Source: Mytilus trossulus (Eukaryota). Taken from it: a stretch of DNA of 64,000 bases. The notes below the pieces were generated by a model. The model made no database searches. It saw only the letters and a list, made by a program, of their open reading frames with translations, and was not told where the DNA came from. The translations under genes and the position numbers were made by a program. The stretch is taken from contig NC_086385.1 in the NCBI RefSeq assembly GCF_036588685.1, positions 24,513,216 to 24,577,215 on the forward strand. Reading direction: 5' to 3'. Below, piece by piece: positions 13,901 to 59,374 of the stretch; the first letter of the stretch is position 1, and every line of letters begins with the position of its first letter.

Positions 13901-16479
13901 TATTTCCAGTGTATTTAACCTGAGAATTCCAGTGTATCTTATGTATTTTAAGTGTCTTTAACCAGGGACTGCCTGTGTATCTTACACATTTTTTTAACCA
14001 ATGACAACTTGTGTACCTTATGTATTTTCAGTGTCTTTGACCAATGACTACCTGTGTATCTTATGTATTTTCAGTGTCCTTAAGCAGGGACTACCTGTGT
14101 ATTTTACACATTTCTTTAACGAATGACAACGTGTGTACCTTATGTATTTTCAGTGTTTTTCACCAATGACTACCTGTTTATCTTATGAATTTTCAGTGTC
14201 TTTCACCAATGATTACCTGTGTATCTTATGTATTTTCAGTGTCTTTAACCAATGACAACCTGTTTATCTTATGCATTTTCAGTATCTTTAAGCAATCAAT
14301 ACCTGTGTATCTTATGTATTTTTGATGTCTTTAACCAATGACAACCTGTATATCTTATGTCTTTAAAGTATCTTTAACCAATGACTACCTGTGTATCTTA
14401 TGTATTTTCAGTGTCTTTAACAAGGGACTACCGTGTATCTTACACATTTCTTTAACCAATGACAACCTGTGTATCTTATGCATTTTTAGTATCTTTAACC
14501 AATGACTACCTGTGTATCTTATGTATTTTTAGTGTCTTTAACCAATGACTACCTGTGTATCTTACACATTTCTTTAACCAATGACAACCTGTGTTTCTTA
14601 TGCATCTTTATTATCTTTAACCAATGACTACCGTTGTATATTATGTATTTTCAGTGTATTTTACCTGGGACTTCCTGTGTATCTTACACATTTCTTTAAC
14701 CAATGACAACTTGTGTACCTTATGTATTTTCAGTGTCTTTAAGCAATGACTACTTGAGTATCTTATACATCTCTTTAACCAATGACAACCTCTGTATCTT
14801 ATGTATTTTCAGTGTATTTTACCTGGGACTTCCTGTGTATCTTACACATTTCTTTAACCAATGACAACTTGTGTACCTTATGTATTTTCAGTGTCTTTAA
14901 CCAATGACAACCTGTATATCTTATGTATTTTTAGTATTCTTAACCAATGACTACCTGTGTATCTTATGTATTTTCAGTGTCTTTAACCAATGACTACCTG
15001 TGTATCTTACACATTTCTTTAGCCAATGACAACCTGTGTATCTTATGCATTTGTAGTATCTTTAAACAATGACTACCTGTGTATCTTATGTATTTTCAGT
15101 GTCTTTAACCAATGAATACTTGAGTATCTTACACATTTTTTTAACCAATGACAACCTCTGTATCTTATGTATTTCCAGTATATTTAACCTGGGACTTCCT
15201 GTGTATCTTACACATTTTTTTAACAAAGACAACTTGTGTACCTTATGTATTTTCAGTGTCTTTAACCAACGACTACCTGTGTATCTTATGTATTTTAAGT
15301 GTCTTTCACCAATGACTACCTTTGATCTTATGTATTTTCAGTGTCTCTAAGCAGGGACTACCTATGTATCTTACACATTTCTTTAACCAATGACAACCTG
15401 TGTACCTTGTGTATTTCCAGTGTCTTTAACCAATGACTACCTGTGTATATTATGTATTTTCAGTGTCTTTAATCAATGACTACTTGTGTATCTTGCACAT
15501 TTCTTTATCGAATGACAACGTGTGTACCTTATGTATTTTCAGTGTTTTTCACCAATGACTACCTGTGTATCTTATGTATTTTCAGTGTCTTTCACCAATG
15601 ACTACCTGTGTATCTTATGTATTTTCAGTGTCTTTAAGCAGGGACTACCTGTGTATCTTACACATTTCTTTAACCAATGACAACCTGTGTACCTTGTGTA
15701 TTTTCAGTGTCTTTAACCAATGACTACCTGTGTATCTTATGTTTTTTCAGTTTCTTTAACCAATGACAACCTGTGTATCTTATGTATTTTCAGTATATTT
15801 AACCAATGACTACCTGTGTATCTTATGTATTTTCAGTGTCTTTAATCAATGACTACTTGTGTATCTTACACATTTCTTTAACCAGTGACAACCTCTGTAT
15901 CCTATGTATTTTCAGTGTATTTAACCTGGGACTTCCTGTGTATCTTATGCATTTCTTTAACCAATGACTACCTGTGTATCTTATGTATTTTCAGTGTCTT
16001 TAACCAATGACTTCCTGTGTATCTTACACATTTCTTTAACCAATGACAAATTGTGTACCTTATGTATTTTCAGTGTCTTTAACCAATGACAACCTGTGTA
16101 TCTTATGTATTTTCAGTATATTTAACCAATGACTACCTGTGTATCTTATGTATTTTCAGTGTCTTTAATCAATGACTACTTGTGTATCTTACACATTTCT
16201 TTAACCAGTGACAACCTCTGTATCCTATGTATTTTCAGTGTATTTAACCTGGGACTTCCTGTGTATCTTATGCATTTCTTTAACCAATGACTACCTGTGT
16301 ATCTTATGTTTTTTCAGTGTCTTTAACCAATGACAACCTGTGTATCTTATGTATTTTCAGTATCTTTAACCAATGACTACCTGTGTATATTATGCATTTC
16401 TTTAACCAATGACTACCTGTGTATCTTATGTATTTCTTTTACCAATGACAACCTGTGTATCTTATGTATTTCAGTGTCT
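4980..16479 (+). repeat. ~11.5-kb satellite of interspersed 43-bp and 36-bp subunits with higher-order duplications
   Basis: Long unit taaccaatgactacctgtgtatcttatgtattttcagtgtctt (43 bp). Short unit taaccaatgactacctgtgtatcttacacatttctt (36 bp). A 1718-bp higher-order duplication is marked by cctgagaattcc at 12201 and 13919 and by near-identical ORFs at 13351 and 15069. Confidence 0.98.
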
Positions 16480-16563
16480 GTTGCAGCCAAATGGTTAAAA
16501 GGATGGACAGAAACAAAGAAAGGATCAACAGATGGAATGAAGGAATACAAAAAGAACAAATAA
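16475..16563 (+). CDS. Probable terminal coding exon of an unidentified upstream gene (..SVAAKWLKGWTETKKGSTDGMKEYKKNK*)
   Basis: Acceptor tatttcag at 16467-16474, then an abrupt switch to non-repetitive purine-rich open frame ending in TAA at 16561-16563. An AT-rich 3'-UTR-like tract follows, with AATAAA at ~17933. No upstream exon was found in the window. Confidence 0.45.
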
Positions 16564-23759: not shown

Positions 23760-26160
23760 AAATTGTGCATTTCTTTTGGTTACCCCGGATATGTGAGTTC
23801 CTTACAGCCAAGCAAGGTCGTTTAGCACTTCAGTAGTAGTATTATCGAATGAATTTTTGGCTGTGGGTGAATAATATGTATCATAAACGTTAGTTTCGAC
23901 TTTTATTTCAACTCCTGACAACCGTTGTAGGATGATAAGTAAACTTTCTACAGTTAATGACATGATTATACATTTGTAAATGTAAATTGTTTCCTTGTTT
24001 TTTGTTGTAATACTGTTGAAATGCATTTTAGAACTTTCCAAAGTATCTAATATAAATTGTCAGAATTCAAAAATTCTAAGCATTGATACATTTATCTAAC
24101 ACGAATTCACTGATTTAAAAAATTCTCATCACCAGTCTAAGAGCTAGAGTCAGACATAAACTAATTTACGTGAACATTTATCTACACTGGTAAAAATATC
24201 GTTATTCATTAAATAAAGAAACGCACAAATACGTTTGTTTTAGTGGGAAGACAGGAACGTTTTTCCCAGTTCAACTTTTGATTTACAATGGTAATTGTGT
24301 CACAGCTCATTATGTTCTTCCCTGTATACTTGAACAGTATTTTTTTTTCATTTTTATCTATTGTTTTTCATTTATTATATTACAGAAATCTTATCGCATT
24401 TTGTTCAGTTTCACATATAAGTATTTGGGACCGTTGTTTCTATTTCCGCGTGCATCAAGTGAGTTGCACTTTGTTTTTGTTGCCTGCATAGTTATTTTTA
24501 TCATTTTCTATGAGTGCAACATGCAGATTTGATGTACATGCTTGTGTTTATGAATTTTGTTTGTCAATATCTTATTTCAGTTGGGTTTATTTATAAACGA
24601 TTTGAAGAGTTAAGAGGAACAATAGTAGATCTTCTCTAAAATATAAATGTCAAAATGACATGCAAATCTTTCTAATTTTTTAAGTTTAGAAGAATAATTT
24701 ATGTTTATTGTTTCCTCTTTAATGATATTCACCAAATATTTAAATCAAGATTGAATTTCAAGAACACTCTATTTGTCACTTAATTGACAAACAGTTCTAC
24801 AAATATTAGAAATTGGATAATCATTAGTTTTGTTTAACAACTGGAACTGCATGATGAATATAACAGGTTACATATACAAAGTGCAACTCGACTGGTGCAC
24901 ACAGAAATAGAAAAAAAAGTCTCGAAATTTGTATATGAAACTATAAAATGCGATCAGATTACTAAATATATAATAAATGAAAACCAAAAGATTAAAAAAC
25001 GAATTAAACTATTGTTTAAGTACATACGAAATAAAATCTAGATTTTTTTTTACATCAAGTGTTACACTTCATTCTTTATCAAACGCGAACTTCTGGGAGC
25101 ATATTCCTGTCTTCCCACTAATACACACTTTATTCGTGTGTTTTTTTTATTCAATTACTAACAGATACTTATACTAGTGTAGACAAATGTGCATTTAAAT
25201 AAATACATGTCTGACTCTTATACCAGTGTAGATAAATTTTTAGCTTAATAAATTCATGTCGAAGTCTTGTACTGGTGATGAGATTTTTTGTCATCAGTCA
25301 ATTTATGTCATATACCTGTACCAATGATTAGATTGTTTTTTTTAATTTCTTTTGGAAGCATTTAAATGCATTACAACAGTATTGAGACAAAGAAACAAGT
25401 TAACAGATCACATATAAAGATTTATAATTATGGCATTAAAAGGATTTTACTTATCATGCTAAAACGGTTGTTAGGAGCTGAGATGACAGTCAGAACTAAT
25501 GTTTTTTGAAAGGATAAAATTGTTCTCTCACAGCCAAAAATCATTCGATACTACTACTACTGAATTGTTTAACGACATTGATTGGCTGTAAGGAACTCGC
25601 ATAGTCGGGATAATCATTAGATACAACTACTACTGAATTGTTTAACGACATTGATTGGCTATAAGGAACTCGCATAGTCGGGATAATCATTAGATACAAC
25701 TACTACTGAATTGTTTAACGACATTGATTGGCTATAAGGAACTCGCATAGTCAGGATAATCATTAGATACTACTACTATTGAATTGTTTAACGACATTGA
25801 TTGGCTATAAGGAACTCGCATAGTCGGGATAATCATTAGATACTACTACTACTGAATTGTTTAACGACATTGATTGGCTATAAGTAACTCGCATAGTCAG
25901 GATAATCATTAGATACAACTACTACTGAATTGTTTAACGACATTGATTGGCTATAAGGAACTCGCATAGTCGGGATAATCATTAGATACTACTACTACTG
26001 AATTGTTTAACGACATTGATTGGCTATAAGGAACTCGCATAGTCGGGATAATCATTAGATACTACTACTACTGAATTGTTTAACGACATTGATTGGCTAT
26101 AAGGAACTCGCATAGTCGGGATACTCATTAGATATGTTCAATTCCATTGGTCTTATTATT
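23760..26160. repeat. Large degenerate inverted repeat (fold-back structure)
   Basis: 23790-24480 is the reverse complement of ~24870-25610, e.g. gagttccttacagccaa..cagtagtagta..tcgaatga versus tcattcga..tactactactgaa..ttggctgtaaggaactc. A third related copy lies at ~27090-27580. Confidence 0.75.
25548..26134 (+). repeat. 73-bp minisatellite, 8 near-identical units
   Basis: Unit atactactactactgaattgtttaacgacattgattggctataaggaactcgcatagtcgggataatcattag starts at 25548, 25621, 25694 and so on. Confidence 0.95.
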
Positions 26161-29653: not shown

Positions 29654-29808
29654 ATGGAGAAAATCTACAGTATACTTTTCATAATGGCATGCACTGTCAC
29701 CGTCAATGGATGCCCTACCTTGTGTAGATGCTTGGAGACGCTTGTTCGTTGCGACTCCAGATCTCTTAAGACAGTTCCATCAAATATACCCAGCTCAACA
29801 ACTTTATT
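29654..29808 (+). CDS. LRR gene, first coding exon: signal peptide + LRRNT cap
   Basis: Acceptor tttcag at 29641-29646, ATG at 29654 in context atcATGg. Translation: MEKIYSILFIMACTVTVNG-CPTLCRCLETLVRCDSRSLKTVPSNIPSSTTL(L), with a hydrophobic N-terminus and the CPxxCxC..VxC..L..VP..IP LRRNT motif. Donor gtaagt at 29809, phase 2. Confidence 0.92.
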
Positions 29809-34195: not shown

Positions 34196-34267
34196 GTATT
34201 TGTTTGATAATTCAATTACCCAGATAGATGCAAACGCCTTTGACGGATTATCGGCACTTACACGTTT
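34196..34267 (+). CDS. LRR gene, intact 72-nt LRR exon
   Basis: ttttcag|...|gtaagt, phase 2-2. Translation (L)YLFDNSITQIDANAFDGLSALTR(L) fits the 24-aa typical LRR consensus. Confidence 0.93.
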
Positions 34268-34496: not shown

Positions 34497-37290
34497 TCGT
34501 CACATCAAGGATTTATTAACCACATTGCGACGCACGTGTTTGAAACAAACTGTTGAATTTTTATCCTTTATCTTTGATATAGATAATTGATTTGAGAGGG
34601 TAATTTAAAGGTCATGTGTTTCAAGCATAGTTTTACGTCTCGCCTTTTTCATTTACGATGGTCCAAAAAAGAAAACTTCAACAGGTTTGGAACAACCTTC
34701 TCCTTAAATGAGGGATCAATTGCAAGTGATAAAAAATGTTGTTTTGTTGTAAAAACCACTTTTAGTACAAAAGGGCACATATTTATATTATTTGAAGAAA
34801 CTTTTCCCAAAGAACTATTCATCTATCTGGTATTAATATATGGTCAAAACATGTCCAATAATTTTGTAATATTCCTGGACCCCTCCTTTAGAAAAGTTGT
34901 TCCAAATAAAATGAATTATTCCCCTTTTAAGATAAGTTTAAGATATTAATCATAGACAACAATGGGAAGGAAAATTGTAAACGAAAAATGTATTAATGGT
35001 ACTTGGCGAAAACACAATTATAGTGGCGAAATATAGATGGTTTTGGCGAAAGAGGTGGCGAAAACAATAATTGACCCATGGGATACCCTATGCGACTGAC
35101 TTTCAAAGCTTTATCAGAATAAATCTGCATGTAATAAGAAATCCGAAAAACAGCTGTTTTATTTAACCATATGATACAATCATGAAAGTGCATATAAAGA
35201 CTCATGTCGGTGATTGCAATCGATTGAACAAGAGTGTATGACTTTTAAATCAGCTGCTGATAGTATTTTGACAGTTACTTTTACTTATTACCATTCCAAG
35301 AAATAGCTTACAATAGTTTGAAATAACACCTTGAAGTTTAATATCAAAATAAGATGTGGTATGATCACCAATAACACAACTATCCACAGACCAAAACCGA
35401 GATATGTAAACATTTACGCCTATGAAAAACTGGAAAACCTAAAATTACCTCCACACAACCCCCTTTCAACCCTAACATTTCCAAAAATGGACATTGCGTG
35501 ATGATGATGATATGTTCAATGGTAACAACTAAATTTTTATTGTGTATGAAACACGACATTAAGTTTGCAGTTAAAGTAAAATCAAGATTGATTTTGATAA
35601 TTTCCATTAAATTATAATTACGTAAACAAAACATGAATAGCTAAACTGTTTTGTGTATTGATAATGCATATTTATTGTCAACATTGATGTAATTTCAACC
35701 ATTTTCAAGTTGCCTACTATTCTCAACGTTTATCTGTTTGAATTGATTAATATGAAAATTAAAATAAGTAAAATAATTGTACTGCATATATATATATATT
35801 AATTTAGAAAATGTTATTTGTGAGTGAGAATTAAATAACTAAACAGATCTACATATTCTTTTAAGTTTGGCGGTTCTTAAAAAATCTGATTTCAAAAAAC
35901 AAATATGCCGTCAGGTGTTGCTGATGTTCTGTCCCATTAAATCATTCGTCTCCTTTTATTTATTATTTCAAGTAAAATAAGTTTTGCCAACTCATCCGCC
36001 TTTTCACCAAATGTGCCCTTCCGAATTAGACTCGTCGCAGGGTGTTCTTACATGAGCAACACGACGGATGCCTTATGAAGAGGAGGACCTGAAGTCACCC
36101 TGTTTTTTTCCTTTTCTTTTCTTTTTTCTTTTTTTTTAGAAGTGGGATCAGGGGTCGGGGGTCTGCGGCGGTGTTCGTATTGCTCAGTCTTTATTTTTGT
36201 ATGTTGTTGTTTGTGTTTTGGTCTATTTGAAAATGTGGCCTGGCGTTGTAAATTTGATTTTAGAGCAATGCAGAGGTTTTCTTTTATCTTAAAATGACAA
36301 GATTGTAATCTTGAGAAGAGATAGACAAATTATGCCTAAATTGAGACCAATACAAAAGAAGATGATGACAATGAGACAACTATCCACCAGAAACATTATA
36401 ACGTAGAAGTTAGCATCGTTAGGTCAGCATATGACCATTAACAATGACCAAAACCGACATCGAGTAGCAAGACATAAAAGGCCATGAAATGAAAATGTAC
36501 AATAGTTGGTAAAAAAAAACAGTAATGCAAAATACCATCACTGCTTTAATGATTTTTTGGGGTTCATTTGAAAAAAAAATCTTAATGGATTTGAAAAAAA
36601 TTGACCGATTGTCTTTGCATTTTTTGCATTCAAACTAGCCTAAACATATTGCCATTTTATTTTGACATGATTAAATATGGGAATCACTCTTTGTTGTCAG
36701 AAGATCCCACATAAAGTCTACAAACCCAAGTTTCGCGATAGCTGTTGTGAAATATGGCCAATAAGATAATTATTTAAGTTCATATATGCATAAGTACTAT
36801 TTATTGTATCATAAACTTCTTTGAGTATGTATGCAATGTATTAACAATTTTCTAGCATCTCTACATCTTTCCAGTTGACTTATATTTTGACTTCAAGATG
36901 TTTGTATTTCTGAATAAGGAAAATAATAGGAGAAATAAATTTCCAAAAATGTTATTTTTCAGGAACCTTGACAACAATCGAATTTCCACATTGAATGGCA
37001 ATCTATTTCGGGAATTAACGGCTCTTAAAGACTTGTAAGTAAACAGATATATCAAATAAAGATTTGTCGCCATATATTGTTGGTTTGCTGTTTTAGTATA
37101 TCACAAATATCTGTTTATACATTTGTTCGGGTAAAATAAGATTTAATGATTGTAATTTGTAACGGCATTTGTTTTCTTCTTTTGAAACCATTTCACAGCA
37201 AAAATATAATATCATTACATTCGATATTACCTTAATGGTTTACCATTTATAAGATACCAGAACGTTTAGATATATTTGTTAATGAATTGA
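34497..37290 (+). repeat. Segmental duplication, copy 1 (intron + LRR exon cassette)
   Basis: Nearly identical to 42599-43877 plus 46794-48440. Paired spurious ORFs occur at 35380..35634 and 43578..43832. Confidence 0.95.
36963..37034 (+). CDS. LRR gene, intact 72-nt LRR exon
   Basis: ttttcag|...|gtaagt, phase 2-2. Translation (L)NLDNNRISTLNGNLFRELTALKD(L). Confidence 0.93.
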
Positions 37291-37629
37291 TCAGACTTTT
37301 GTTAATTACTAAATGAGAAAGACACACTATTTTAAACCATTATTACTTTAAGTAGTTTAATCAAAACATTGCGCGATATGAAATAAGTGTTTCCTTATTG
37401 TGTTCAGAAGATCCGAAATAAAATATACAAACACTGATATCGACGCAGCTGTTATTATCATATTTACAAATAATTTGTAATCATTGACAATACAGTAAAA
37501 CTCTTTGAATACCTTAAATATGTAATTTTTTACTTAAACCATTGAATTTCTTTTTTTAAGTGAATTTGTTTGCATTAATGAAATTATTTATCTTATGCAC
37601 AACTGCATTTCAAGAAATTTATTTTGAAG

Positions 37630-37692
37630 GTTCCTGTACAACGATCAAATTAAAAAAGAAAATCTTTCGTTGTTTCACGGTTCCACAATTTT
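37630..37692 (+). pseudogene. Degenerate LRR pseudo-exon
   Basis: ttttgaag|G TTC CTG TAC AAC GAT CAA ATT (FLYNDQI), then a deleted or frameshifted NLFRxxTxL-like remainder. No GT donor. Conserved flanking intron motifs are present. Confidence 0.55.
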
Positions 37693-38090
37693 ATAAAACT
37701 AATGTTGCCTCGTGTGTTGCTAGCTTGCTGTCGCAATGATTTAGTTTTTTGTTCTACTGGACAACTTTTCTTTGAAAAGTTTCTACTAAGATTTATCAAT
37801 TTGGGTGAATTTAGTTTGGTATTACATGTAAAGTGTGCAATTATCAATAAGTCAAAAAATCAAGACGTTGCAATCTATTTTATTGATTTCTTAAAATAAT
37901 TTTAGGTAATACGTGTGTGTCAATGGTTAGGTTATCCTGTATCAGCTATCTAATAAGGATAAGATATTAAAGTAGTGCAGATCTTCTTAAAATATAGATC
38001 ACATCTTGCTTTGAGGAATAGCATTATCGATCTCAGGCTACATATTTGCACTTTTTTTCTATTACTACTACATATTTCCATTACAATAAA

Positions 38091-38113
38091 GGTTTGACGG
38101 CTCTAACAACATT
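38091..38113 (+). pseudogene. 3' remnant of an LRR exon (GLTALTTL)
   Basis: ggtttgacggctctaacaacatt is nearly identical to 54358-54380 and is followed by the post-exon motif tgtgttgctggtttacttttgcaatgat. Confidence 0.65.
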
Positions 38114-39656
38114 GATAGAATCTGTTTCTACAAAGTGATAATTGTCTTCCTGTGTTGCTGGTTTACTTTTGCAATGATTTTAATGTTCTTTTTGAATTAC
38201 AGTTGCAATTTTCTTCAAAACATCTATTAATTTGTGTTAATTTAATTTGGTATTACATATAAAGTGTACAGTTAAAAATTGCAAATATGGACATTCATTT
38301 TTTTTTATTGGAGTGCTAATATAACTTAGAGGGGTTTGGATTTTGCCAGTTGAGAGGTTGCTTTTTTTAGGACAAGCTAGTTTACATAATCAGGGATGAA
38401 GTTATTCTTTAGAGGTTGTTTCTTTTAGGACAAGCTAGTTTATATAATGAGGGATGAAGAAATTCTTAACAAATACGGAATATCATTATCGGTTTGGTGC
38501 TATTCATTTGTGTATTTTATCAGTATTACATATTTTCAGACAAAAAAAACTTTGGACTTTAGACTACTTCAAATTGAATTTCTTGTATGCTGTTCCAAAA
38601 TAGAAAATGAAGATCAATGAAGGAATTGAATATCTATAGTTATGTATAATTTTCTTTTTGCACTATTTCTAAAAATATGTAAATTTTGTTTTGATTTAAT
38701 TTGTTACTGTTTTCACGAAATAATCATTAAGACAGTTTATAGTTATGTTATTTGCTTGATAAGACAGTTAAGGTCAGCTGAATTCCTTCATTCTTGTAAT
38801 ATGACATATCGTAGTGTAATGGACTAGATTCTATGTAAACATATATGAACAAATCGATATATTACAATACAGTTCTGATTGTGATCAAGTTCTGAAATTG
38901 ATATAAAACTAAAATGAAAATTGTTCATTCAATCCTCGAAAACAGTATCCCATTTGGTAAAGTTGTCGTTACTTAGTCCTGAATAAGGAAGGCAGAAAAT
39001 TATCAGAACAATATCACGATTACTAAATCCTTCTTTAAAACCCAATTTGAAGGAAATCTGTATACAAAATATATTATAAGCGTAAAGGAATTTAAAAGAT
39101 TTATGAGGATAATTTAGGAAACTGAACTGAAAATGTTGTGTCAGCATCCTATCGCGGTTATGTCTACGTGTAAACAACTACGACCTAGGTGATGCCATCG
39201 TTGATGTTTAGACTCTAATTACATGTTGTGCCAGGATCCTATACAGGCTGTTGTCTGCATGAACTCCAACTACTACCTAGGTTATGCCATCGCTGATGGC
39301 TACGACCCTAATTAAAGTAGGGTAAACATTTTACACGTCCAAAGTCCGTACTTTAACTCTGATCATTTAGACATTTGTGTGTATTCAAATTGATCATATT
39401 AAAATTGTCGGTGAATAACCTTGATTTTTTAAGATTTAAGACTAGACATTGAAAATATGGTTGTGTTTCATGATAATAATGTTAGCCATATATGGATAAG
39501 ATAGATATCTTTGTTATATTATAAAAATCTGTCAGTATGTATGTACCAATCAACATGATATACAACACTTCCTTTTGCCCATTATTAACAACCTAGTCGG
39601 TTTGCATTGATGAATATGCAGGATGTAATGCAGAAATACGTTACATTATTTTGTAT

Positions 39657-40394
39657 GTACCTACATACCAAACAGATAACAAAAGTTCCCATATGTTCCT
39701 AGTTTACTGTACCTACAGACCAAACAGATAACAAAAGTCCCCATATGTTCCTAGTTTACTGTACCTACAGACCAAACAGATAACAAAAGTCCCCATATGT
39801 TCCCAGTTTACTGTGCCTACAGACCAAACAGATAACAAAAGTCCCCATATGTTCCTAGTTTACTGTACCTACAGACCAAACAGATAACAAAAGTCCCCAT
39901 ATGTTCCTAGTTTACTGTACCTACAGACCAAACAGATAACAAAAGTCCCCATATGTTCCCAGTTTACTGTACCTACAGACCAAACAGATAACAAAAGTCC
40001 CCATATGTTCCTAGTTTACTGTACCTACAGACCAAACAGATAACAAAAGTTCCCATATGTTCCTAGTTTACTGTACCTATAGACCAAACAGATAACAAAA
40101 GTCCCCATATGTTCCTAGTTTACTGTACCTACAGACCAAACAGATAACAAAAGTCCCCATATGTTCCTAGTTTACTGTACCTACAGACCAAACAGATAAC
40201 AAAAGTCCCCATATGTTCCTAGTTTACTGTACCTACAAACAAAACAGATAACAAAAGTCCCCATGTGTTCCTAGTTTACTGTACCTACAGACCAAACAGA
40301 TAACAAAAGTCCCCATATGTTCCTAGTTTACTGTACCCACAGACCAAACAGATAACAAAAGTCCCAATATGTTCCTAGTTTACTGTACTTACAG
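39657..40394 (+). repeat. 52-bp minisatellite, 14 units, derived from a deleted LRR exon
   Basis: Unit gtacctacagaccaaacagataacaaaagtccccatatgttcctagtttact starts at 39657, 39709, 39761 and so on. A single-copy homolog lies at 62365-62415. Confidence 0.93.
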
Positions 40395-42164
40395 TGACCA
40401 TTAGTGAGGGTATTGTTAATAAATATACTTGTATAAAACTAGATACCACTAGAATTAGAATTTTTCTCCAGTTTACAGTGAAAGTGTTCTGTATATTTTA
40501 TTGAAAATGGGTAAAAGATAACAACCTTATGGCTGCTGATTTGCAAATGTTCGCGGGAAGGAATCATGTCATTAATTATCCTGCGTATAACATTCCATTT
40601 CTCAAGCATTTATTTTTTTAATAAAATAGGTTCAAGCGACCATATTCTTCAACAATTATTCCAAATAATGAGAAATTTTAATAGAATACCAAATAATTGT
40701 TAATTCTATATATATTATTATATTGTCATTAAAAGTCTGTTAAAGGTGATAAGTTAAATGCTCAAGCCCGTCTATTGCGAATAATGCCTTTTTAAATATT
40801 GATCTTAAATGTTCCGATTGACACTATAGTTTACCTTTTCGTCTTTGCAAACAAGGGAGACCATTGAAAACTTCATTATTTTTTGTATATTCAAAAATGC
40901 ATTGTTCTGTATTTCTACCTTCATAGTATCTTCGGTCACAAATCATCGAGTATATACTTTCTTTTAGAAATCGAGACTTTCAGACCTTTTAATAAAACAT
41001 GTAAAACGGGATAAAGTTTTCGCCAGCACACGAAATACCTCAATTTGTCAGAAACTATTTCGACAGATATCGATGCAGCGAAGGTTGCAGCCATAAAAGA
41101 AAAAGATAAAGAGACATTCAACTTTGAGAATTAAATTCTGATGTATGAGGTTAAATATCTGTATAATTATGTAATAAGGACTCCAAATCATTAAATTGAT
41201 ATGGGTTGGATTTAACCAATATTATTTTAACCTTACCTATTCACCTCCTCATCTCTTAATCTTTTCAATAAAAATTTGTTTATTACTTTGTGTATGGGTT
41301 CCGATTAGAAAATAAATAGATTTCAACTAGATAAGAAGGTTTAGATTAAAAACTTGCCTTCTCGCAATTATCAGAGAAATACTTCTTGATAAATGTTCGA
41401 AAAAACAGAAACCACTCACTTGCATGTCAAAATATGTCATACATACTTGATTGTTTTTTCTTATACGTTATTTATTGTATCTGTTATATCTTAACGTTCA
41501 TCTCAACTTAACTGATATTAACAGGCAATCGGATTGCCATTAGTGTTTAAGCTTTATCGTAGGTTTATTTAACAGCAGTTAATACGACAATGTATTTGTC
41601 ATAAATCCATTTGTATCTATTGTTTTAAATGGTATACAGAGAAAACAGATACATATCAGATACATTTAGTTATATGAAATAGGATTGTTAGTATGAATAA
41701 TTTTGAAATCCACGGCTTATCATACTAATAGTTTACCATCACCAAATGAGACCATTCTTTAAAATAGCTGAAAATTGACATTGTCAAGTTGTCTAAAATA
41801 ACACAGTCATGTTTACTATAAGGAAAAGGTCATGTGGCATAATAACAAATAAGACAACCGTCCATAGACCTGTTATCTAAAAGGATCAAGAAAGAAATGA
41901 TCGATTAGATCTTAATAGTGATAAACTTTTTGGAACGAAATCGACTTTGTTTTAACTTTCTCGGACATATTTTTTGGTTAACGATGAAACAATTAACATA
42001 TACTGATATTTGTACTTCTGGATATCTCGCAGTTTATTTTATCTAAAAAAATGATGATATCGTTTCGGTTGTTGTGTTTACATCTATCTTACTTAAATGA
42101 TGTTTCCAGACAAGGGGAGGAGTACATTTATATTTTCAGTGTGTAGTTCGTCTAAGGTTACAGG

Positions 42165-43249
42165 CAGGGTTTCCGCTGGTGGTCGCCATTTTTGCATTTT
42201 GCGAAAAAAATAATAATTGTAGCGATATCCATTCACCATTTGCGAAAGAATTTGGCGAAAGAAATTTATATGGTCACATCCTATTATTTCGTACGTCATA
42301 TACATTCGTATTATGCATGCTTTTTCAATGGAAGTTATGACGACTCAATGCATTCTTAATAGCACGAAAACCCATGACTCGAGGATATATAACTATTTAA
42401 TTTCATCCATCTTGTTTATTTATTATTTTTTGGGTTTCTCGAACTTTACCTGATCAGACAATACTCGGAATCCACATTGAACTCGTTACAATTTTGACAG
42501 AAAATCCAAAATCAGCTGATTGCTTTTTATAGGACTAATAAATAAAGGTTTTGATTGTTTGTATGACAAAATGGTATGGTTAAATGGCGTCCATCAGACG
42601 TCACATCAAGGATTTATTAACCATATTGCGACGTCAGTGTTTGAAACAAACTGTTGAATTTTTATCCTTTATCTTTGATATAGATAATTGATTTGAGAGG
42701 GTACTTTAAAAGGCATGTGTTTCAAGCATAATTTTACGTCTCGCCTTTTTCATTTACGATGGTCAAAAAAAGAAAACTGTCGTTATGAAGAAATATATTC
42801 AACAGGTTTTGAACAACCTTCTCCTTAAATGAGGGATCAATTGCAAGTGATAAAAAATGTTGTTTTGTTGTAAAAACCACTTTTAGTACAAAAGGGCACA
42901 TATTTATATTATTTGAAGAAACTTTTCCCAAAGAACTATTCATCTATCTGGTATTAATATATGGTCAAAACATGTCCAAGAATTTTGTAATATTCCTGGA
43001 CCCCTCCTTTAGAAAAGTTGTTCCAAATAAAAGGAATTATTCCCCTTTTAAGATAAGTTTAAGATAATAATCATAGACAACAATGGGGCAAAACAGATTT
43101 TTTTTTGGGGGGAGGGGGTAGAAAGAAGGAAAATTGTAAACGAAAAATGTATTAATGGTACTTGGCGAAAACACAATTATAGTGGCGAAAAATATATGGT
43201 TTTGGCGAAAGAGATGGCGAAAACAATAATTGACCCAGGGGATACCCTG
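42165..43249. mobile_element. Non-autonomous hAT-like DNA transposon
   Basis: TIR cagggtttccgctgg / ccaggggataccctg. Perfect 8-bp TSD gttacagg at 42157-42164 and 43250-43257. Subterminal ggcgaaa repeats are present. Confidence 0.88.
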
Positions 43250-43877
43250 GTTACAGGTTCTCTATACGACTTACTTTCAAAGCTTTATCAGAATAAATCT
43301 GCATGTAATTAGTTCGAAAAAAATATAGAAAAGAAATCCGAAAAAAACAGCTGTTTTATTTAACCATATGATACAATCATGAAAGTGCATATAAAGATTC
43401 ATGTCGGTGATTGCAATCGATTGAAAAAGAGTGTATGACTTTTAAATCAGCTGCTGTTAGTATTTTGACAGTTTACTTTTTCTTATTACCATTCCAAAAA
43501 CAAGCTTACAATAGTTTGAAATAACACCTTGAAGTTTAATATCAAAATAAGATGTGGTATGATCACCAATAACACAACTATCCACAGACCAAAACCGAGA
43601 TATGTAAACATTTACGCCTTTGAAAAACTGGAAAACCTAAAATTACCTCCACACAACCCCCTTTCAACCCTAACATTTCCAAAAATGGACATTGCGTGAT
43701 GATGATGATATGTTCAATGGTAACAACTAAATTTTTATTGTGTATGAAACACGACATTAAGTTTGCAGTTAAAGTAAAATCAAGATTGATTTTGATAATT
43801 TCCATTAAATTATAATTACGTAAACAAAACATGAATAGCTTAACTGTTTTGTGTATTGATAATGCATATTTATTGTC

Positions 43878-46793
43878 GAATATATATATATACTTTATAT
43901 ACTTTATTTCTCATAAAACTACAATTACATAGTTATAGAGAACATACATAAATATAACTATAAGGTACAATTTTTACAAGCATGTGTGAACAATACAATG
44001 AAATTAACTTGGAGGACTGACTTTCACATTTATAACTTTGATAAATTTACATAGTTTTTCTAATATTACAATATTACATGAATTAAATAGTTGATCAAAC
44101 TTATAGATATTAGGGTTAGACCAGCAGTATGTAGGTAAAAATTTCTTTCTTTCAAACATAAAAGATCCACAATTCATAATATAATGGTATTCGTCACCGA
44201 TGTCGTTTGAGTCACAGAGACGGCAGATTCTGTCTTCTCTCTGTAAACCCTGCCACCTTCCGGACTCAATCGGCAAGTGGTGACTACCACATCTATATTT
44301 GCATAATGTATATATGAATTTGTAAGGTAAAACAGAAAAATATTTTTCCAATTGAAAATTATTTTTAAAAATACGATAACATAAAGTTTTAGGTGATTCG
44401 GCAACAAATGCAAAGCATTCTTGTTGAAACTGATCTTTAAGTTTTTGCTCAATACATTTTAACACCCATTTATCAGCAAACTGTGCATTCCATATATTGG
44501 ACATACCACAATTATCAAAAATATTTTTAATACATGATATCCACTTAGTGTTTATTCCGTAATCATTATAATATAAAAATACAAGCTTATATAATACAGC
44601 ACAAATTTTACTTTCTTTTCCATTAAGAAGTCTACTCCAGAAATTAATCATTCGCAGTTTTACAGTCACAGTAATAGGGTATCTGCCAAGTTCTGCATAC
44701 ACTATGAAATTTGGAGTAGACTGTTTTAAATGTAAAATCATTTTACAAAATTGTAAATGTACACGTTCAAGAATATCTATATTTTCAAAACCCCATATTT
44801 CTGATCCATATAAAAATATTGGTACAACCATTTTGTCAAATAAATCAAGTTGACATTCTATTGACAAATTGTTTTGTCTACCTTTTTTTAAAACGCTATA
44901 CATAGCTTTTGTTGCTTGTTCTTTTAAATATTTTTTATTTGATAAAAAGGATCCACTTCTAGAAAATAAAATACCTAAATATTTGTATTCTTTTACAATT
45001 TCAATGTCGTTACAATTACCTGTGAACTTGAGATTTGCTGGCATTCTGCCACTCGAAAAGATCAAAACTTTAGTTTTATTTGTATTTATTTTCATTTTCC
45101 ATTCGTCACAATATTCGTAAAATGTATTTAACATGTATTGTAGATCAGTGCTATTTTCTGCTAATAAAACAGTGTCATCTGCATATAAAAGTAAAAACAA
45201 TTTCAAAAATACTGTCAGCTCATTTTCGATTTCTTGTGATATAGATTTTAAGCCTGTTATGTTTTTCTTTTCAAAAAAAGTTTGAAGATCATTTAAAAAT
45301 ATAGAAAACAAAGCAGGTGAAAGATTTTCCCCTTGCCGAACCCCCATCTCACAAGGAAAGAAATCAGATGTTTTACCCTGATGTATAATACGCGATTTGG
45401 CATAATCATACATACTCTGAATAACTCGAAAAAATTTCCCATTTACTTCATTCTGCAATAATTTGAACAGAAGTAAATTTCGCTGTAGAGAGTCAAACGC
45501 TTTTTCAAAGTCGATAAAAGCACAATGTAACTTTTTCTTTCCCAATTTTAACAATTCAAATAAAATATGTATATTAAAAATATGTTCAGTCGTAGAATAA
45601 TTCCTTCTGAAACCTGCTTGGTTTTCATTCAATATACACAATTCATCAAGATAATTACATAATCTTGTGTTCAATATTGAGGTAAAAAGTTTACCCAGAG
45701 TAGACAATAACGTTATAGGCCTATAGTTTTGTGGATCACTTTCAGAGCCTTTGTTTTTAAACAATGGAATTACATTTCCTATTAACCATGCCTCAGGCAA
45801 CAATCCTGTGTCAAAAACAAGATTAAATAAACACACATAAACATCAATAAAAAATTCAATAGACGAGCATATATACTCATTTACAATAAGATCATCACCA
45901 GGGGTCTTATTATTTTTCAGGCTTTTTATTGCCTTCAATATTTCATCTTTTGTAATACAAGCATTAAGAAATACATTTGAAGAATTTTCGTTTACATCAT
46001 TTTCTAAAATATACCGATCATTTGTTTCTTTATTTTTATTCAGATCCTTAAAAAAAGAAAACAAATCTTCAATATTAATATCATTTTTTTTCTTTCGTTT
46101 ACCCCGATTAATAATTTTCCAAAATTCTTTCGGGTTTTTTGTTCGCATCTTTTTCATCTTTGAACGTAAATCAACGTTAAATGATCTAATATTTTTATCC
46201 ATAGTTTTTTTATATAAAGTCTCACTACGCCTCAAACGTTCCTTGAATATACGTGAACCATATCGTTTATATAACCTTTTTGATTTTCTAAACGCCCTCC
46301 TTTCCCGGCGGCATTCTGTGTTAAACCAATCACGGTGATTTTGTTTCCCTCCCGTGTAATCAAATCCATAAGTTTTCTGTACGAACTCCCCAAATGTATT
46401 TCTAGCAGAATTGAGTAAAACATCTCTTATTTCATTTACAATTTCATCAATAGTATTTTTATCAACATTTTGAACATTTTCAGTTTTTGTCATAATAAAA
46501 GATAACAATTGAGATATACTTTCTTTGTCAAGATTGTCTTTATATTCATTAACTTGATCATGATTCCATTTTTCAATATATGTATTATTTTCACCAGATT
46601 CTACATTTATATTTACATTTGATTGCTTAGTATTACTACAATTGAGTACTAATTCGAGTGGACAATGGATATCAGAATATAAACTGCTAAATGGTAGAAC
46701 ATCAAAATTTTCTACTAAATACAATACATCTGCAGTACTTATTGCATAGTCTACGACACTGGTATTCTTGCTCGTAGGTTTACCTACTTCATC
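43878..46793 (-). mobile_element. 5'-truncated non-LTR retrotransposon (LINE, RTE-X-like)
   Basis: Boundaries are defined by the empty paralogous site. On the - strand the 3' end carries AATAAA followed by a (TA)n tail. No clear TSD, only a 2-nt tc overlap. The clade assignment is from motif recall. Confidence 0.92.
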
Positions 46794-46901
46794 AACATTG
46801 ATGTAATTTAAACCCTTTTCAAGTTGCCTACTATTCTCAACGTTTATCTGTTTGAATTGATTAATATGAAACTTAAAATAAGTAAGATAATTGTACTGCA
46901 T
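44004..46901 (-). CDS. LINE ORF2: C-terminal part of the APE endonuclease, reverse transcriptase, C-terminal Cys/His motif
   Basis: Motifs SVVDY..SDIHCP (APE end), KTPGDD, NYRPITLL, QAGFR, FIDFEKAFD, GVRQGENLSP, YADD, YKYLG and CRLC..DEYH...C. The first ~36 codons (46794-46901) are host flanking DNA. Confidence 0.93.
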   Translation of the reverse strand: MQYNYLTYFKFHINQFKQINVENSRQLEKGLNYINVDEVGKPTSKNTSVVDYAISTADVLYLVENFDVLPFSSLYSDIHCPLELVLNCSNTKQSNVNINVESGENNTYIEKWNHDQVNEYKDNLDKESISQLLSFIMTKTENVQNVDKNTIDEIVNEIRDVLLNSARNTFGEFVQKTYGFDYTGGKQNHRDWFNTECRRERRAFRKSKRLYKRYGSRIFKERLRRSETLYKKTMDKNIRSFNVDLRSKMKKMRTKNPKEFWKIINRGKRKKKNDINIEDLFSFFKDLNKNKETNDRYILENDVNENSSNVFLNACITKDEILKAIKSLKNNKTPGDDLIVNEYICSSIEFFIDVYVCLFNLVFDTGLLPEAWLIGNVIPLFKNKGSESDPQNYRPITLLSTLGKLFTSILNTRLCNYLDELCILNENQAGFRRNYSTTEHIFNIHILFELLKLGKKKLHCAFIDFEKAFDSLQRNLLLFKLLQNEVNGKFFRVIQSMYDYAKSRIIHQGKTSDFFPCEMGVRQGENLSPALFSIFLNDLQTFFEKKNITGLKSISQEIENELTVFLKLFLLLYADDTVLLAENSTDLQYMLNTFYEYCDEWKMKINTNKTKVLIFSSGRMPANLKFTGNCNDIEIVKEYKYLGILFSRSGSFLSNKKYLKEQATKAMYSVLKKGRQNNLSIECQLDLFDKMVVPIFLYGSEIWGFENIDILERVHLQFCKMILHLKQSTPNFIVYAELGRYPITVTVKLRMINFWSRLLNGKESKICAVLYKLVFLYYNDYGINTKWISCIKNIFDNCGMSNIWNAQFADKWVLKCIEQKLKDQFQQECFAFVAESPKTLCYRIFKNNFQLEKYFSVLPYKFIYTLCKYRCGSHHLPIESGRWQGLQREDRICRLCDSNDIGDEYHYIMNCGSFMFERKKFLPTYCWSNPNIYKFDQLFNSCNIVILEKLCKFIKVINVKVSPPS

Positions 46902-48107
46902 ATATATATATATATTAATTTTTAAAATGTTATTTGTGAGTGAGAATTAAATAACTAAACAGATCTACTTATTCTATTAAGTTTGGCGGTTCTTAAAAAA
47001 ATCTGATTTCAAAAAACAAATATGCCATCAGGTGTTGCTGATTTTCTGTCCCATTAAATCATTCGTCTCCTTTTATTTATTATTTCAAGTAAAATAAGTT
47101 TTGCCAACTCGTCCGCCTTTTCACCAAATGTGCCTTTCTGAATTAGACTCGTCGCAGGGTGTACTTACACGAGCAACATGACGGATGCCTTATGAAGAGG
47201 AGGACCTGAAGTCACCCTGTTTTTTTTTTCCTTTTCTTTTCTTTTTTCTTTTTTTTTTAGAAGTGGGATCAGGGGTCGGGGGTCGGCGGTGGTGTTCGTG
47301 TTGCTCAGTCTTTATTTTTGTATGTTGTTGTTTGTGTTTTGGTCTATTTGAAAATGTGGCCTGTCGTTGTAAATTTGATTTAAGAGCAATGCAGAGGTTT
47401 CCTTTTATCTTAAAATGACAAGATTGTAATCTTGAGAAGAGATAGACAAATTATGCTCAAATTGAGACCAATATAAAAAGAAGATGATGACAATGAGACA
47501 ACTATCCACCAGAAACATAATAACGTAGAAGTTAGCATCGTTAGGTCAGCATAAGACCCTTAACAATGACCAAAACCGACATCGAGTTGCAAGGCATAAA
47601 AGGCCATGAAATGAAAATGTACAATAGTTGGTAAAAATAAACAGTAATGCAAAATACCATCACTGCTTTAATGATTTTTTGGGGTTCATTTGAAAAAAAA
47701 ATCTTAACGGATTTGAAAAAAAATGACCGATTGTCTTTGCCAATATCCTTTTTGACATGTTTTTTTTTTGGCATTCAAACTAGCCTTAACATATTGCCAT
47801 TTTATTTTGACATGATTAAATATGGGAATCACTCTTTGTTGTTAGAAGATCCCACATAAAGACTACCAACCCAAGTTTCGCGATAGCTGTTGTGAAATAT
47901 GGCCAATAAGATAATTATTTAAGTTCATATATGCATAAGTACTATTTATTGTATCATAAACAACTGTGAGTATGTATGCAATGTATTAACAATTTTCTAG
48001 CATCTCTACATCTGTCCAGTTGACTTAAATTTTGACTTCAAGATTTTTGTATTTCTGAATAAGGAAAATAATAGGAGAAATAAATTTCCAAAAATGTTAT
48101 TTTTCAG

Positions 48108-48179
48108 GAGACTTGACTACAATCAAATTTCCACATTGGCTGGCAATCTATTTCGGGGATTAACGGCTCTTCAATACTT
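48108..48179 (+). CDS. LRR gene, intact 72-nt LRR exon (paralog of 36963-37034)
   Basis: ttttcag|...|gtaagt, phase 2-2. Translation (L)RLDYNQISTLAGNLFRGLTALQY(L). Confidence 0.93.
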
Positions 48180-48446
48180 GTAAGTAAACAGATATATCAA
48201 ATGAAGATTTGTCGCCATATGTTGTTGGTTTGCTGTTTTAGTATATCACAAATATCTGTTTAAACATTTATTCGGGTAAAATAAGATTTAATGATTGTAA
48301 TTTGTAACGGCATTAGTTTTCTTCTTTTGAAACCATTTCACAGCAAAAATATAATATCATTACATTCGGTATTTCCTTAATGGTTAACCATTTTTAAGAT
48401 ATCAGAACGTTGAGATATTTGTAAATGAATTAATTGATCAGGTAAA

Positions 48447-54308: not shown

Positions 54309-54380
54309 AAGATATGAAAACAATCGAATCACAACACTTGAAGTAAATCTCTTTCGAGGTTTGACGGCTCTCACAACATT
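54309..54380 (+). pseudogene. Full-length open 72-nt LRR cassette lacking a GT donor
   Basis: Translation RYENNRITTLEVNLFRGLTALTT(L). It is followed by ataaga instead of gtaag, and the acceptor context is weak (cacggaag). Confidence 0.8.
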
Positions 54381-55829: not shown

Positions 55830-58137
55830 CCGGATATTAAAAACATTGCTGATTAACTATGCAGGTATATAGATTTACAATTTAAAGTTCACATATTTTG
55901 TTCACACCGCCAGTTTTGGTTGATGCGGTCAAACAATTTTGTTGTTGTAAAGTCAGCATGAGGTATCAAAACTACTGACATTTTGTTACATATCAACATT
56001 TGAGTAAAAGGAGGACATGCTGTTATCCTAAATTTATGCGAACAAAAATGTGTTCTTATTATATTGCAATATTGCTGTCGATTGTAATTATACAATATAT
56101 CCCAACATTAAAAATTTGGCTGATTAACGATGCAGGTATATAGATTTACAAATTAAAGTTCACAGATGGTCAGTTTTGGTCAATGCGGTCAAATAATGGT
56201 GTTGTACAAGTAAGCTTTAGGTATGAAAACTACTGAAATTTTGTGACGTATCAGTATTTTGGGTAAAAAGAGGATATGCTGGCACACTAAATTAATGCGA
56301 ACAAAAATTTGTTCTTATTATATTGGAATATTGCTGTTCATTGTATTAGACATTGAATCCTGACATAAAAAATATGGCTGATTTACTATGCGGGTATATA
56401 GATTTACAAATTAAAGTGCACATATGGTCGGTTTTGGTCAATGCGGTCAAAAATATTTGATGTACAAGTCAGCATGAGGTATCAAAACTACTGAAATTTC
56501 GTTACGTATCAGTATTTTAAGTAAAAAGAGGACATGATGGCACCCTAAATTTATGCAAACAAAAAATTGTTCTTATAATATTGCAATATTGCTGTCCATT
56601 GTATTATACATTGAGTCCTGACATAAAAATATGGCTGATTTACTATCATGACTATGCATTATGCTATGCGGGTATATAGATTTACAAATTAAAGTGCACA
56701 TATGGTCAGTTTTGGTCAATGCGGTCAAATAAATTTGTTGTACAAGTAAGCTTGAAGTATGAAAACTACTGAAATTTTGTTACGTATCAGTATTTTGAGT
56801 TAAAAGAGGACATGCTGGCACCTTAAATTCATGCAAACAAAAATTTGTTCTTATTATATTGGAATATTGCTGTTCATTGAATTATACATTGAATTCTGAC
56901 ATAAAAAATATGGCTGATTTACTATGCGTGTATATAGATTTACAAATTAAAGTGCCTATATGGTCAGTTTTGGTCAATGCGGTCAAATAATTTTGATTTA
57001 CAAGTCAGCATGAGGTATCAAAACTACTGAAATTTTGTTACGTATCAGTATTTTGGGTAAAACGAGGACATGCTGGCACCCTAAATTTATGCAAACAAAA
57101 ATTTGTTCTTATTATATTGCAATATTGCTGTCCATTGTATTATACATTGAATCCTGAAATAAAAAAATATGGCTGATTTACTCTGCGGGTATATAGATTT
57201 AGAAATTAAAGTGCACATATTGTCAGTTTTGGTCAATGCTGTCAAATAATTTTGTTGTACGAGTCAGCATGAGGTATCAAAACTACTGAAATTTTGTTAC
57301 ATATCAGTATTATGAGTAAAAAGAGGACATGCTGGCACCCTGAATTCATGTAAACAAAAATTTGTTCTTATTATATTGGGATATTGCTGTCCATTGTATT
57401 ATAAATTGAATCCTGACATAAAAAATATGGCTGATTTGCTATGCGGGTATATAGATTTACAATTTAAAGTTCACATATGGTCATTTTTGTCAATGCGGTC
57501 AAATAATTTTGTTATACAAGTCAGCTTGAGGTATGAAAACTACTGAAGTTTTGTTACGTATCAATATTTTGAATAAAAAGAGGACTTGCTGGTATCCTAA
57601 ATTTATGGGAACAACAATTTGTTCTTATTATATTGTTATATTGCTGTCCATTGTATTATACATAGAAAACTGGCATAAAAAATATGGCTGATTTATTAAA
57701 GATGTATAAATTAAAGTGCACATATGGTCAGTTTTGGTCAATGCGGTCAAATAATTTTGTTGTACAAGTCAGCATGAGGTATGAAAACTACTGAAATTTT
57801 GTTACGTATCAGTATTGTGAGTAAAAATAGGACATGCATGCTGGCACTCTAAATTTATGTGAATAAAAATTTGTTCTTATTATATTGGACTATTGTTGTC
57901 CATTGTATTATACTTTGAATCCTGACTTAAAAAAAATATGGCTGATTTACTATGCGGGTACTATATAGATTTACAATTTAAAGTTCACATATGGTCAGTT
58001 TTGGTTGATGCGGTCAAATAATTTTGATGTACAAATCAGCTTGAGGTATCAAAACTACTGAAATTTTGTTACGTATCAATGTTTTGAAGAAAAGCCGGAC
58101 ATGCTGACACCCGAAATTTATGCAAACAAAAATTTGT
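55830..58137 (+). repeat. ~259-bp tandem repeat, ~9 units, internal to the TIR element
   Basis: gtatatagattt recurs near 55864, 56135, 56393, 56671, 56930, 57188 and 57446. Confidence 0.93.
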
Positions 58138-59302: not shown

Positions 59303-59374
59303 GTACCTACACATCAATTGTATTACAACGCTGGACATAAATATATGTAAAGGTTTGACGGCTCTTACAAAACT
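59303..59374 (+). pseudogene. Full-length open 72-nt LRR cassette lacking an AG acceptor
   Basis: Translation YLHINCITTLDINICKGLTALTK(L). Donor gtgggt is present, but the acceptor position reads tg (cttgtg|g). Confidence 0.8.

What the first reader, a model, noticed from the sequence alone, without database searches (positions are those of the whole stretch)
36963..48179. Twin LRR exons differ only at non-synonymous sites while their introns are ~97% identical
Manual alignment of 36963-37034 with 48108-48179 gives 9 differences in 72 nt, in 7 codons, all amino-acid changing (N>R, N>Y, R>Q, N>A, E>G, K>Q, D>Y), with no purely synonymous codon difference. The 122 nt upstream show 3 differences and the ~125 nt downstream about 4. 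Five of the seven changes fall on x positions of the xxLxLxxNx segment, which forms the ligand-binding concave face in LRR proteins, and the structural L/N/F residues are untouched. An exon more divergent than its introns indicates diversifying selection or exon-restricted conversion. The sample is small.
Basis: partly seen in the sequence, partly recalled or inferred. Interest (0 to 1): 0.85.

Follow-up and report, generated by a model that had tools for sequence, protein, structure and literature searches.

The report
Twin mussel receptor exons diverging fast
Two copies of a 72-base exon in a large mussel cell-surface receptor gene sit in almost identical introns. They differ at nine protein-changing bases, mostly on the predicted binding face. 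This fits selection for new binding surfaces, a pattern already known from other immune-type receptors.

Summary
Exon A (36963-37034) and exon B (48108-48179) differ at 9 of 72 bases in 7 codons, all amino-acid changing. The 2.7 kb of duplicated intron around them differs at 3.4% (Fisher p=0.001).

Three more copies of the cassette elsewhere in the genome show that the excess lies on one branch. Copy A carries 7 private changes inside the exon, against 15 in 1294 flanking bases (p about 3e-5). The other four exons change at roughly the intron rate. All 14 changes among the five exons are non-synonymous (p about 0.01), and 8 fall in the six concave-face codons.

No donor sequence for A's patch exists in the assembly.

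The exons belong to a roughly 89-kb gene of Mytilus trossulus. It has a signal peptide, an LRRNT cap, one LRR per 72-base exon, and probably a membrane-spanning tail. The fold of a close relative best matches lamprey and hagfish VLRs and Slit.

Best reading: episodic diversifying selection after exon duplication. This is a known kind of event in an apparently undescribed gene family.

A splice-dead cassette family also shows a weaker twofold excess. This scan had already reported the same pattern on other pieces of this genome.

The parts
29654..29808 (+). First coding exon: start codon, signal peptide and four-cysteine LRRNT cap. It ends two bases into a Leu codon before a GTAAGT donor.
   Evidence: Pfam LRRNT match of 29.2 bits, above the cut-off, at window 29708-29791. 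Translation and donor read directly. The phase matches the 72-nt exons.
34196..34267 (+). 72-nt phase-1 LRR exon X, lying just outside the duplicated block.
   Evidence: Splice-aware scan and exon HMM. AG acceptor and GTAAGT donor.
34498..37288 (+). Duplicated block A, 2.8 kb of intron around exon A. It is an extra copy placed ahead of the spacer.
   Evidence: Self-BLAST and MAFFT. Homology to chromosome C10 starts only at 37299.
36963..37034 (+). Exon A, the outlier copy, with 7 private substitutions between 36965 and 37030.
   Evidence: Five-copy alignment. The nearest private flank changes are at 36869 and 37076.
37299..42584 (+). Spacer intron between the two blocks, including a 52-bp minisatellite. 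It is collinear with the C10 paralogs.
   Evidence: BLAST against loci L043 and L045 at 93-95% identity. Tandem Repeats Finder.
42599..43877 (+). Duplicated block B, left part.
43878..46791 (-). Retrotransposon inserted in block B only. An open frame of 980 aa (44007-46946) runs through it and past its right-hand end.
   Evidence: Pfam RVT_1, E=9e-35. Absent from blocks A, L004 and L005.
46792..48431 (+). Duplicated block B, right part, containing exon B.
   Evidence: Homology to copies C and L004 continues beyond 48431.
48108..48179 (+). Exon B, close to the family consensus, with one private change (Tyr at x8).

Best explanation
Exons A and B are consecutive single-LRR exons near the 5' end of a roughly 89-kb Mytilus trossulus gene. 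The gene encodes a type I surface protein: signal peptide, LRRNT, a run of 24-residue LRRs each on its own 72-nt symmetric exon, and probably a stalk, membrane span and tyrosine-motif tail.

The cassette was copied together with about 2.8 kb of intron, giving three copies in this gene and one in each of two paralogous genes on C10. After copying, the exon on the branch leading to copy A took up 7-8 amino-acid replacements. These are mainly on the solvent-exposed residues of the concave beta-sheet, while the introns drifted at the neutral rate. This is episodic positive (diversifying) selection for a new binding surface on an added repeat.

Shown here: the duplication, the exon-bounded excess, the absence of synonymous change and the position bias. 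Inferred: that the exons are spliced into one mRNA, that the concave face binds a ligand, and that selection rather than an unseen donor produced the patch.
For: The genome holds five cassettes.

Excess on the A branch: A-private changes number 7 of 72 in the exon against 15 of 1294 in the flanks, Poisson 2.7e-5 and Fisher 7.6e-5. The cluster is bounded by the exon. No other 72-column window holds more than 3 A-private changes.

No synonymous change: all 14 changes on the five-copy tree are non-synonymous. The intron mutation spectrum predicts 28% synonymous, giving p=0.011.

Position bias: 8 of the 14 changes lie in codons x2, x3, x5, x7, x8 and x10, p=0.005. Pooled over five intact cassette families there are 19 concave, 9 other-x and 1 structural replacement, p=0.001.

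Other explanations tested: base composition predicts only a 4% higher mutability for the exon. No sequence closer than the four known paralogs matches exon A anywhere in the 1.3-Gb assembly.

Gene context: an intact first exon, canonical splice sites in all five copies, and an open 215-codon tail exon 89 kb downstream, arranged as in the two C10 paralogs.

Structure: the AlphaFold model of a close relative has pLDDT 86-97 over the ectodomain and places x3-L4-x5 in the beta-strands.
Against: No RefSeq protein for this locus turned up among relatives of 130-710 aa.

Pooled over five intact families, omega is about 1.9 with p=0.085. Within the AB family, concave against other non-structural positions is 8 against 5, p=0.07.

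Cassette family E2 has TG in place of the AG acceptor in every copy. It still shows exon divergence about twice that of its flanks (15 of 72 against 67 of 611, p=0.015), including a stop codon and hits at structural residues. Selection on a spliced exon cannot explain that.

Several cassettes downstream of B are splice-disabled.
Confidence: 0.6

Rival explanations
1. Exon-limited gene conversion. A short tract of 66 to at most 206 nt was copied into block A from a related cassette that is missing from this assembly. The donor could be lost, lie on the other haplotype, or be a presence-absence variant.
For: The seven private changes form one compact patch bounded by unchanged flanks at 36869 and 37076. 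This size is typical of conversion tracts (established knowledge). The locus is a mosaic of segmental duplications shared between C13 and C10. Block A has the shortest private flank branch of the five copies, as if its flanks had been homogenised.
Against: No donor exists in the 1.3-Gb assembly, and partial matches of about 20 nt or more would have been listed. Cassettes of other families differ from this one at many synonymous sites, yet A imported none. A donor with seven replacements and no silent change would itself need diversifying selection, so this rival only moves the selection elsewhere.
Confidence: 0.15
2. No selection. A local burst of mutation, or chance, acted in a relaxed or decaying locus, and the all-non-synonymous pattern is luck.
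For: The splice-dead E2 family also has an exon-centred excess with a neutral-looking 3:10 ratio of silent to replacement changes. Many neighbouring cassettes are disabled. The intactness of the five copies is only weakly improbable under neutrality (my estimate, about 0.1). Seven of seven non-synonymous has p about 0.10.
Against: The rate excess on the A branch is p about 3e-5. The changes are of mixed types rather than one strand-coordinated class, and only one of them involves a CpG. No structural Leu, Asn or Phe was hit, there is no stop and no indel. The concave-face bias is seen across five families. The E1 cassette shows the opposite pattern, with the exon more conserved than its flanks, so LRR sequence is not intrinsically hypermutable.
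Confidence: 0.12
3. Assembly artefact: the two copies are alleles or haplotigs wrongly placed in tandem.
For: The flank divergence of 3-4% is within the range of allelic divergence in mussels (from memory). Read depth could not be checked.
Against: The duplicated block is only 2.8 kb and sits in non-homologous surroundings on both sides. Block B alone carries a retrotransposon. B is collinear with both C10 paralogs while A is not. The window has no gaps.
Confidence: 0.03

Closest known systems
Diversifying selection on solvent-exposed xxLxLxx residues of LRR receptors (plant R genes, vertebrate and sea-urchin TLRs, mussel TLR ectodomains; PMC10279657)
   Same: Replacements concentrate on the concave beta-strand x positions while the Leu, Asn and Phe scaffold is kept. 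The setting is young paralogs in an expanded invertebrate receptor family.
   Different: No TIR domain was seen near the locus among the listed hits, so this is not a TLR. Here the neutral yardstick is the co-duplicated intron rather than synonymous sites. The signal is one episodic branch, not pervasive.
Brown-algal ROCO genes with one LRR per 72-bp exon (PMC11378527, citing Zambounis et al. 2012)
   Same: One LRR per symmetric 72-nt exon, growth by tandem exon duplication and shuffling, and positively selected sites on the concave face. Orphan LRR exons lie in the genome.
   Different: That family is cytoplasmic LRR-ROC-COR GTPases with phase-2 exons. This one is an animal secreted or membrane LRRNT protein with phase-1 exons in introns of many kilobases. 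Alternative splicing is shown there and untested here.
Lamprey and hagfish variable lymphocyte receptors
   Same: The best structural match of the family's ectodomain is hagfish VLR 2o6r, TM 0.90 normalised to the target, rmsd 2.1 A, 36% identity. Shared features are LRRNT, 24-residue LRR modules, LRRCT and a Ser/Thr stalk, hypervariable concave residues, and arrays of 72-nt cassettes, some without splice sites.
   Different: The cassettes studied here carry canonical splice sites and would be joined by splicing. There is no sign of an incomplete germline gene or of somatic copy-choice assembly. The family tail is a transmembrane segment plus a cytoplasmic region.
Slit and vasorin type extracellular LRR proteins
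   Same: NCBI's automatic names for relatives are vasorin-like and slit homolog-like. Slit2 LRR domains are among the top fold matches. The LRRs are encoded by separate exons of about 72 nt (from memory for Slit).
   Different: No EGF, laminin-G or FN3 domains were seen in the close relatives. The ectodomain is short (4-6 LRRs), and the family is large (at least 30 first-exon paralogs) and evolves fast.
Mutually exclusive tandem exons (Dscam type)
   Same: Tandem duplicates of equal length and phase within one gene.
   Different: Including both keeps the reading frame. A RefSeq model of a relative in M. galloprovincialis contains near-identical twin LRRs in series. The copies are 11 kb apart. 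Exclusivity is untested.

Membership tests
Extracellular LRR protein with LRRNT cap (typical 24-residue LRR) | LxxLxLxxNxL repeats of 24 residues | tested here: met
   Exon HMM hits at 34197, 36964 and 48109 with E of 1e-15 to 1e-17. The scaffold residues are invariant in all five copies.
Extracellular LRR protein with LRRNT cap (typical 24-residue LRR) | Signal peptide plus four-cysteine LRRNT | tested here: met
   Pfam PF01462 scores 29.2 bits, above the cut-off, at window 29708-29791. A hydrophobic N-terminus precedes it.
Extracellular LRR protein with LRRNT cap (typical 24-residue LRR) | LRRCT cap, stalk and membrane anchor in the same gene | tested here: inconclusive
   An open tail exon lies at C13:24631489-24632040 on the same strand, 45% identical to the tail of relative P0043. 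The C10 paralogs have the same layout. No LRRCT exon was located for this gene, and the link to exon 1 is inferred.
LRR receptors under diversifying selection at the binding face | Non-synonymous change exceeds the neutral rate | tested here: met
   On the A branch, 7 of 72 in the exon against 15 of 1294 in the intron, p=3e-5. Across the five copies, 0 synonymous against 14 non-synonymous, p=0.011.
LRR receptors under diversifying selection at the binding face | Replacements enriched on concave x positions | tested here: met
   8 of 14 changes, p=0.005. Pooled families give 19 against 9 against 1, p=0.001. The strands include x3 and x5 in the model of a relative.
LRR receptors under diversifying selection at the binding face | Signal recurs across paralogs | tested here: inconclusive
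   Non-A copies change at the intron rate (ratios 0.4-1.6). Pooled omega is about 1.9, p=0.085.
VLR-type somatically assembled receptor | Incomplete germline gene completed by copying flanking cassettes | tested here: not met
   Exon 1, X, A and B have canonical donors and acceptors in matching phase.
VLR-type somatically assembled receptor | Somatically rearranged copies in DNA reads | not testable with these tools
Brown-algal ROCO-type LRR exon shuffling | One LRR per symmetric 72-nt exon with tandem exon duplication | tested here: met
Brown-algal ROCO-type LRR exon shuffling | ROC-COR GTPase domains | tested here: not met
   Pfam on relatives P0007, P0011, P0014, P0023, P0034, P0037 and P0033 shows LRRNT and LRR families and no ROC or COR.
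Mutually exclusive tandem exons | Only one of the duplicates is used per transcript | not testable with these tools
   No RNA data were obtainable.

The most novel reading that the evidence does not exclude
The cassette arrays on C13 and C10 may undergo a diversification process aimed at LRR cassettes themselves. This could be templated micro-conversion or targeted mutagenesis, acting on spliced and splice-dead cassettes alike. Silent cassettes would then serve as a reservoir of variants, making this an invertebrate germline analogue of VLR or chicken-pseudogene diversification. The exon-centred excess in the acceptor-less E2 family is the only hint.
Probability: 0.06. Interest if true: 0.85.

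Novelty: new member of a known kind. Interest (0 to 1): 0.45.

Why it matters
The co-duplicated introns provide an internal neutral clock. The case therefore shows cleanly that an added LRR repeat can be re-tuned at its binding face within about 3% of neutral divergence.

It also points to a family that my searches of the held papers did not find described. The family consists of giant mussel genes of about 90-130 kb, with one LRR per exon, relic cassettes, a VLR-like ectodomain fold and a tyrosine-motif tail. Such a family could add to the large innate recognition repertoire of bivalves.

The principle itself, diversifying selection on LRR concave residues, is well established. The scan had already met it elsewhere in this genome.

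Tried and rejected
Donor search: the 72-nt exon A and its peptide were searched against the whole genome. Only the four known paralogs came back (87-90% identity), and the next hits were 64% or less at protein level. Short shared words with other families (8-12 nt) are no more than family resemblance.

Composition and CpG as a cause: rejected. The predicted effect is +4%, and only one of seven changes involves a CpG.

First flank statistics with fixed 600-nt flanks were contaminated by non-homologous sequence. They were replaced by HSP-limited counts.

TLR identity: no TIR hit near the locus among the 150 listed of 499 candidates, so this is not conclusive. The LRRCT Pfam search gave only 5 genome-wide hits, none nearby.

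A RefSeq model for this locus was not found among homologues of P0007 and P0043. The chromosome C13 hit P0058 belongs to another gene at 12.8 Mb.

Searches were made exon by exon by reference, and the fold used a database relative.
Full report
**The observation**

Both exons are 72 nt and phase 1, with identical polypyrimidine-AG acceptors and GTAAGT donors. They differ at 9 bases in 7 codons. Every difference changes the amino acid, and five lie at LRR positions x2, x3, x5, x8 and x10.

Self-comparison shows a duplicated block, 34498-37288 against 42599-43877 plus 46792-48431. Copy B is split by a 2.9-kb insertion through which an open 980-codon reverse-transcriptase frame runs on the minus strand. 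Over the whole duplicate the introns differ at 92 of 2717 aligned sites (3.4%) against 12.5% in the exon, Fisher p=0.00095. The only other 72-nt window with as many mismatches is a T-rich tract beside a 4-nt indel, which is an alignment effect.

**More copies**

A search of the window's own genome found five cassettes with homologous flanks. They are A and B, a third copy C about 33 kb downstream of B on the same chromosome, and two copies on chromosome C10.

Aligned together, exon A is the outlier. It has 7 private substitutions between 36965 and 37030. The nearest private flank changes are at 36869 and 37076. Over 1294 flanking sites where all five copies align, A has only 15 private changes. 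The expectation for 72 nt is 0.83, giving Poisson p=2.7e-5 and Fisher p=7.6e-5.

The other four exons differ from each other by 2-6 bases, about the intron rate, with ratios of 0.4-1.6. B and C differ by two bases.

**Quality of the changes**

All 14 variable exon columns are non-synonymous. A mutation spectrum taken from flank singletons predicts 28% synonymous changes, so the probability of none in 14 is 0.011. Base composition raises the exon's expected mutability by only 4%.

Eight of the 14 changes fall in the six concave-face codons, p=0.005. No scaffold Leu, Asn or Phe is touched.

Four further intact cassette families were available. Pooled replacements are 19 concave, 9 other x and 1 structural, p=0.001 against an even spread over non-structural positions. 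Pooled omega is about 1.9 and not significant, p=0.085.

**Donor test**

Exon A as DNA and as peptide finds nothing closer than the four paralogs. Cassettes of other families differ at many silent sites that A did not import. Conversion from an extant donor is therefore not supported. A donor absent from this assembly cannot be excluded.

**Gene context**

A Pfam LRRNT hit lies in the window. It belongs to a first coding exon at 29654-29808 with a start codon, signal peptide and four cysteines. Its donor leaves two bases of a Leu codon, the same phase as the 72-nt exons. The order of exons is exon 1, X (34196), A, B.

Downstream cassettes at about 54.3, 59.3 and 59.9 kb, and one just past the window, lack a canonical splice dinucleotide or are truncated.

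A phmmer search with exon 1 reached Mytilus proteins. One sits on a contig whose length equals this genome's C10, which identifies the genome as Mytilus trossulus.

The relatives share one architecture: signal peptide, LRRNT, 4-6 LRRs, an LRRCT-like Cys motif, a Ser/Thr stalk, a transmembrane segment and a tail with Tyr motifs.

Mapping the M. edulis relative P0043 onto the genome gave an open 215-codon tail exon at C13:24631489-24632040, 89 kb downstream of exon 1 on the same strand. The two C10 paralogs have the same layout over 119 and 127 kb, and each holds one AB-type cassette. Assigning this tail to the gene is an inference.

The AlphaFold model of P0043 is confident over the ectodomain, with beta-strands every 24 residues covering x3-L4-x5. 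Its best solved matches are hagfish and lamprey VLRs, followed by Slit2 domains.

**Duplication history**

B is collinear with the C10 copies: spacer 37299-42584 followed by the block. Block A is an extra copy joined 230 nt after exon X and directly before the spacer. These different surroundings, the retrotransposon in B only, and the absence of gaps argue against a haplotype artefact. Read support could not be obtained.

**Caveat from a control**

Cassette family E1 has an AT donor in all copies and is more conserved than its flanks. Family E2 has TG in place of the AG acceptor in all copies and is about twice as divergent as its flanks: 15 of 72 against 67 of 611, p=0.015. Its changes include a stop codon and hits at scaffold residues. 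This unexplained excess in an apparently dead cassette keeps a non-selective contribution open.

**Literature**

Episodic positive selection in mussel TLR ectodomains is published (PMC10279657). Brown-algal ROCO genes show the same design of one LRR per 72-bp exon, with exon shuffling and selected concave sites (PMC11378527). My searches of the held papers found none that describes this mussel family.

**Earlier notes of this scan**

One search shows that the scan already reported the same exon-against-intron pattern and a giant LRR receptor gene on other pieces of this genome. I used those notes as leads and re-derived the species, the gene start and the pattern independently.

**Verdict**

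This is a real and statistically solid case of a duplicated LRR exon evolving faster than its introns at binding-face codons. It is best explained by episodic diversifying selection: a known kind of event in an apparently undescribed gene family.

Noticed in passing
window 4975-16490: An 11.5-kb satellite array with a 43-bp unit (higher-order periods of 79 and 122 bp) and strong GC and AT skew. It lies between the upstream family gene and this gene.
   Followed up: no
window 44007-46946 (-): An open 980-codon frame with an RVT_1 domain. It runs through the insertion that interrupts block B only and looks like a young retrotransposon copy.
   Followed up: partly
window 54309-54380 and copies L041:4355, L021:1494, L046:5332, L027:196: Cassette E1 has an AT (ATAAG) donor in every copy. 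Even so, its exon-like part is 2-5 times more conserved than its flanks, which is odd for a dead exon.
   Followed up: partly
window 59303-59374 and copies L048, L049, L050: Cassette E2 has TG in place of the AG acceptor in all copies. Differences among close copies cluster in the first 50 nt of the cassette, about twice the flank rate, and include a stop codon. One x8 site shows all four bases among five copies.
   Followed up: partly
L040:1654-1725 (C13, just past the window) versus L044:4347-4418 (C10): The same cassette is intact on C10. On C13 it has an AA acceptor and a stop at the first codon, so the exon was lost in this gene after duplication.
   Followed up: no
L039:5632-6145 (C13:24498808-24499308, + strand, upstream of the window): A tail exon 84-87% identical to the C-terminus of M. 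edulis P0043. P0043's N-terminus best matches this window's exon 1, which lies 44 kb downstream. This is either a rearrangement between the species or a chimeric gene model.
   Followed up: no
window 39656-40394; also L043, L045, L040: A 52-bp minisatellite in the spacer is present in the C10 and C13 paralogous spacers as well, so it predates the segmental duplications.
   Followed up: no
window 55911-58137 and 25539-26134: A 258-bp satellite (8.6 copies) separates cassettes E1 and E2 here, while in other copies they lie about 600 nt apart. A 73-bp tandem repeat (8 copies, 97% identical) lies upstream of the gene.
   Followed up: no
proteins P0014 (M. galloprovincialis) and P0007 (M. trossulus, C10): RefSeq models of relatives contain near-identical twin LRRs in series that differ mainly at x positions. 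This suggests duplicated cassettes are co-included in this family.
   Followed up: partly
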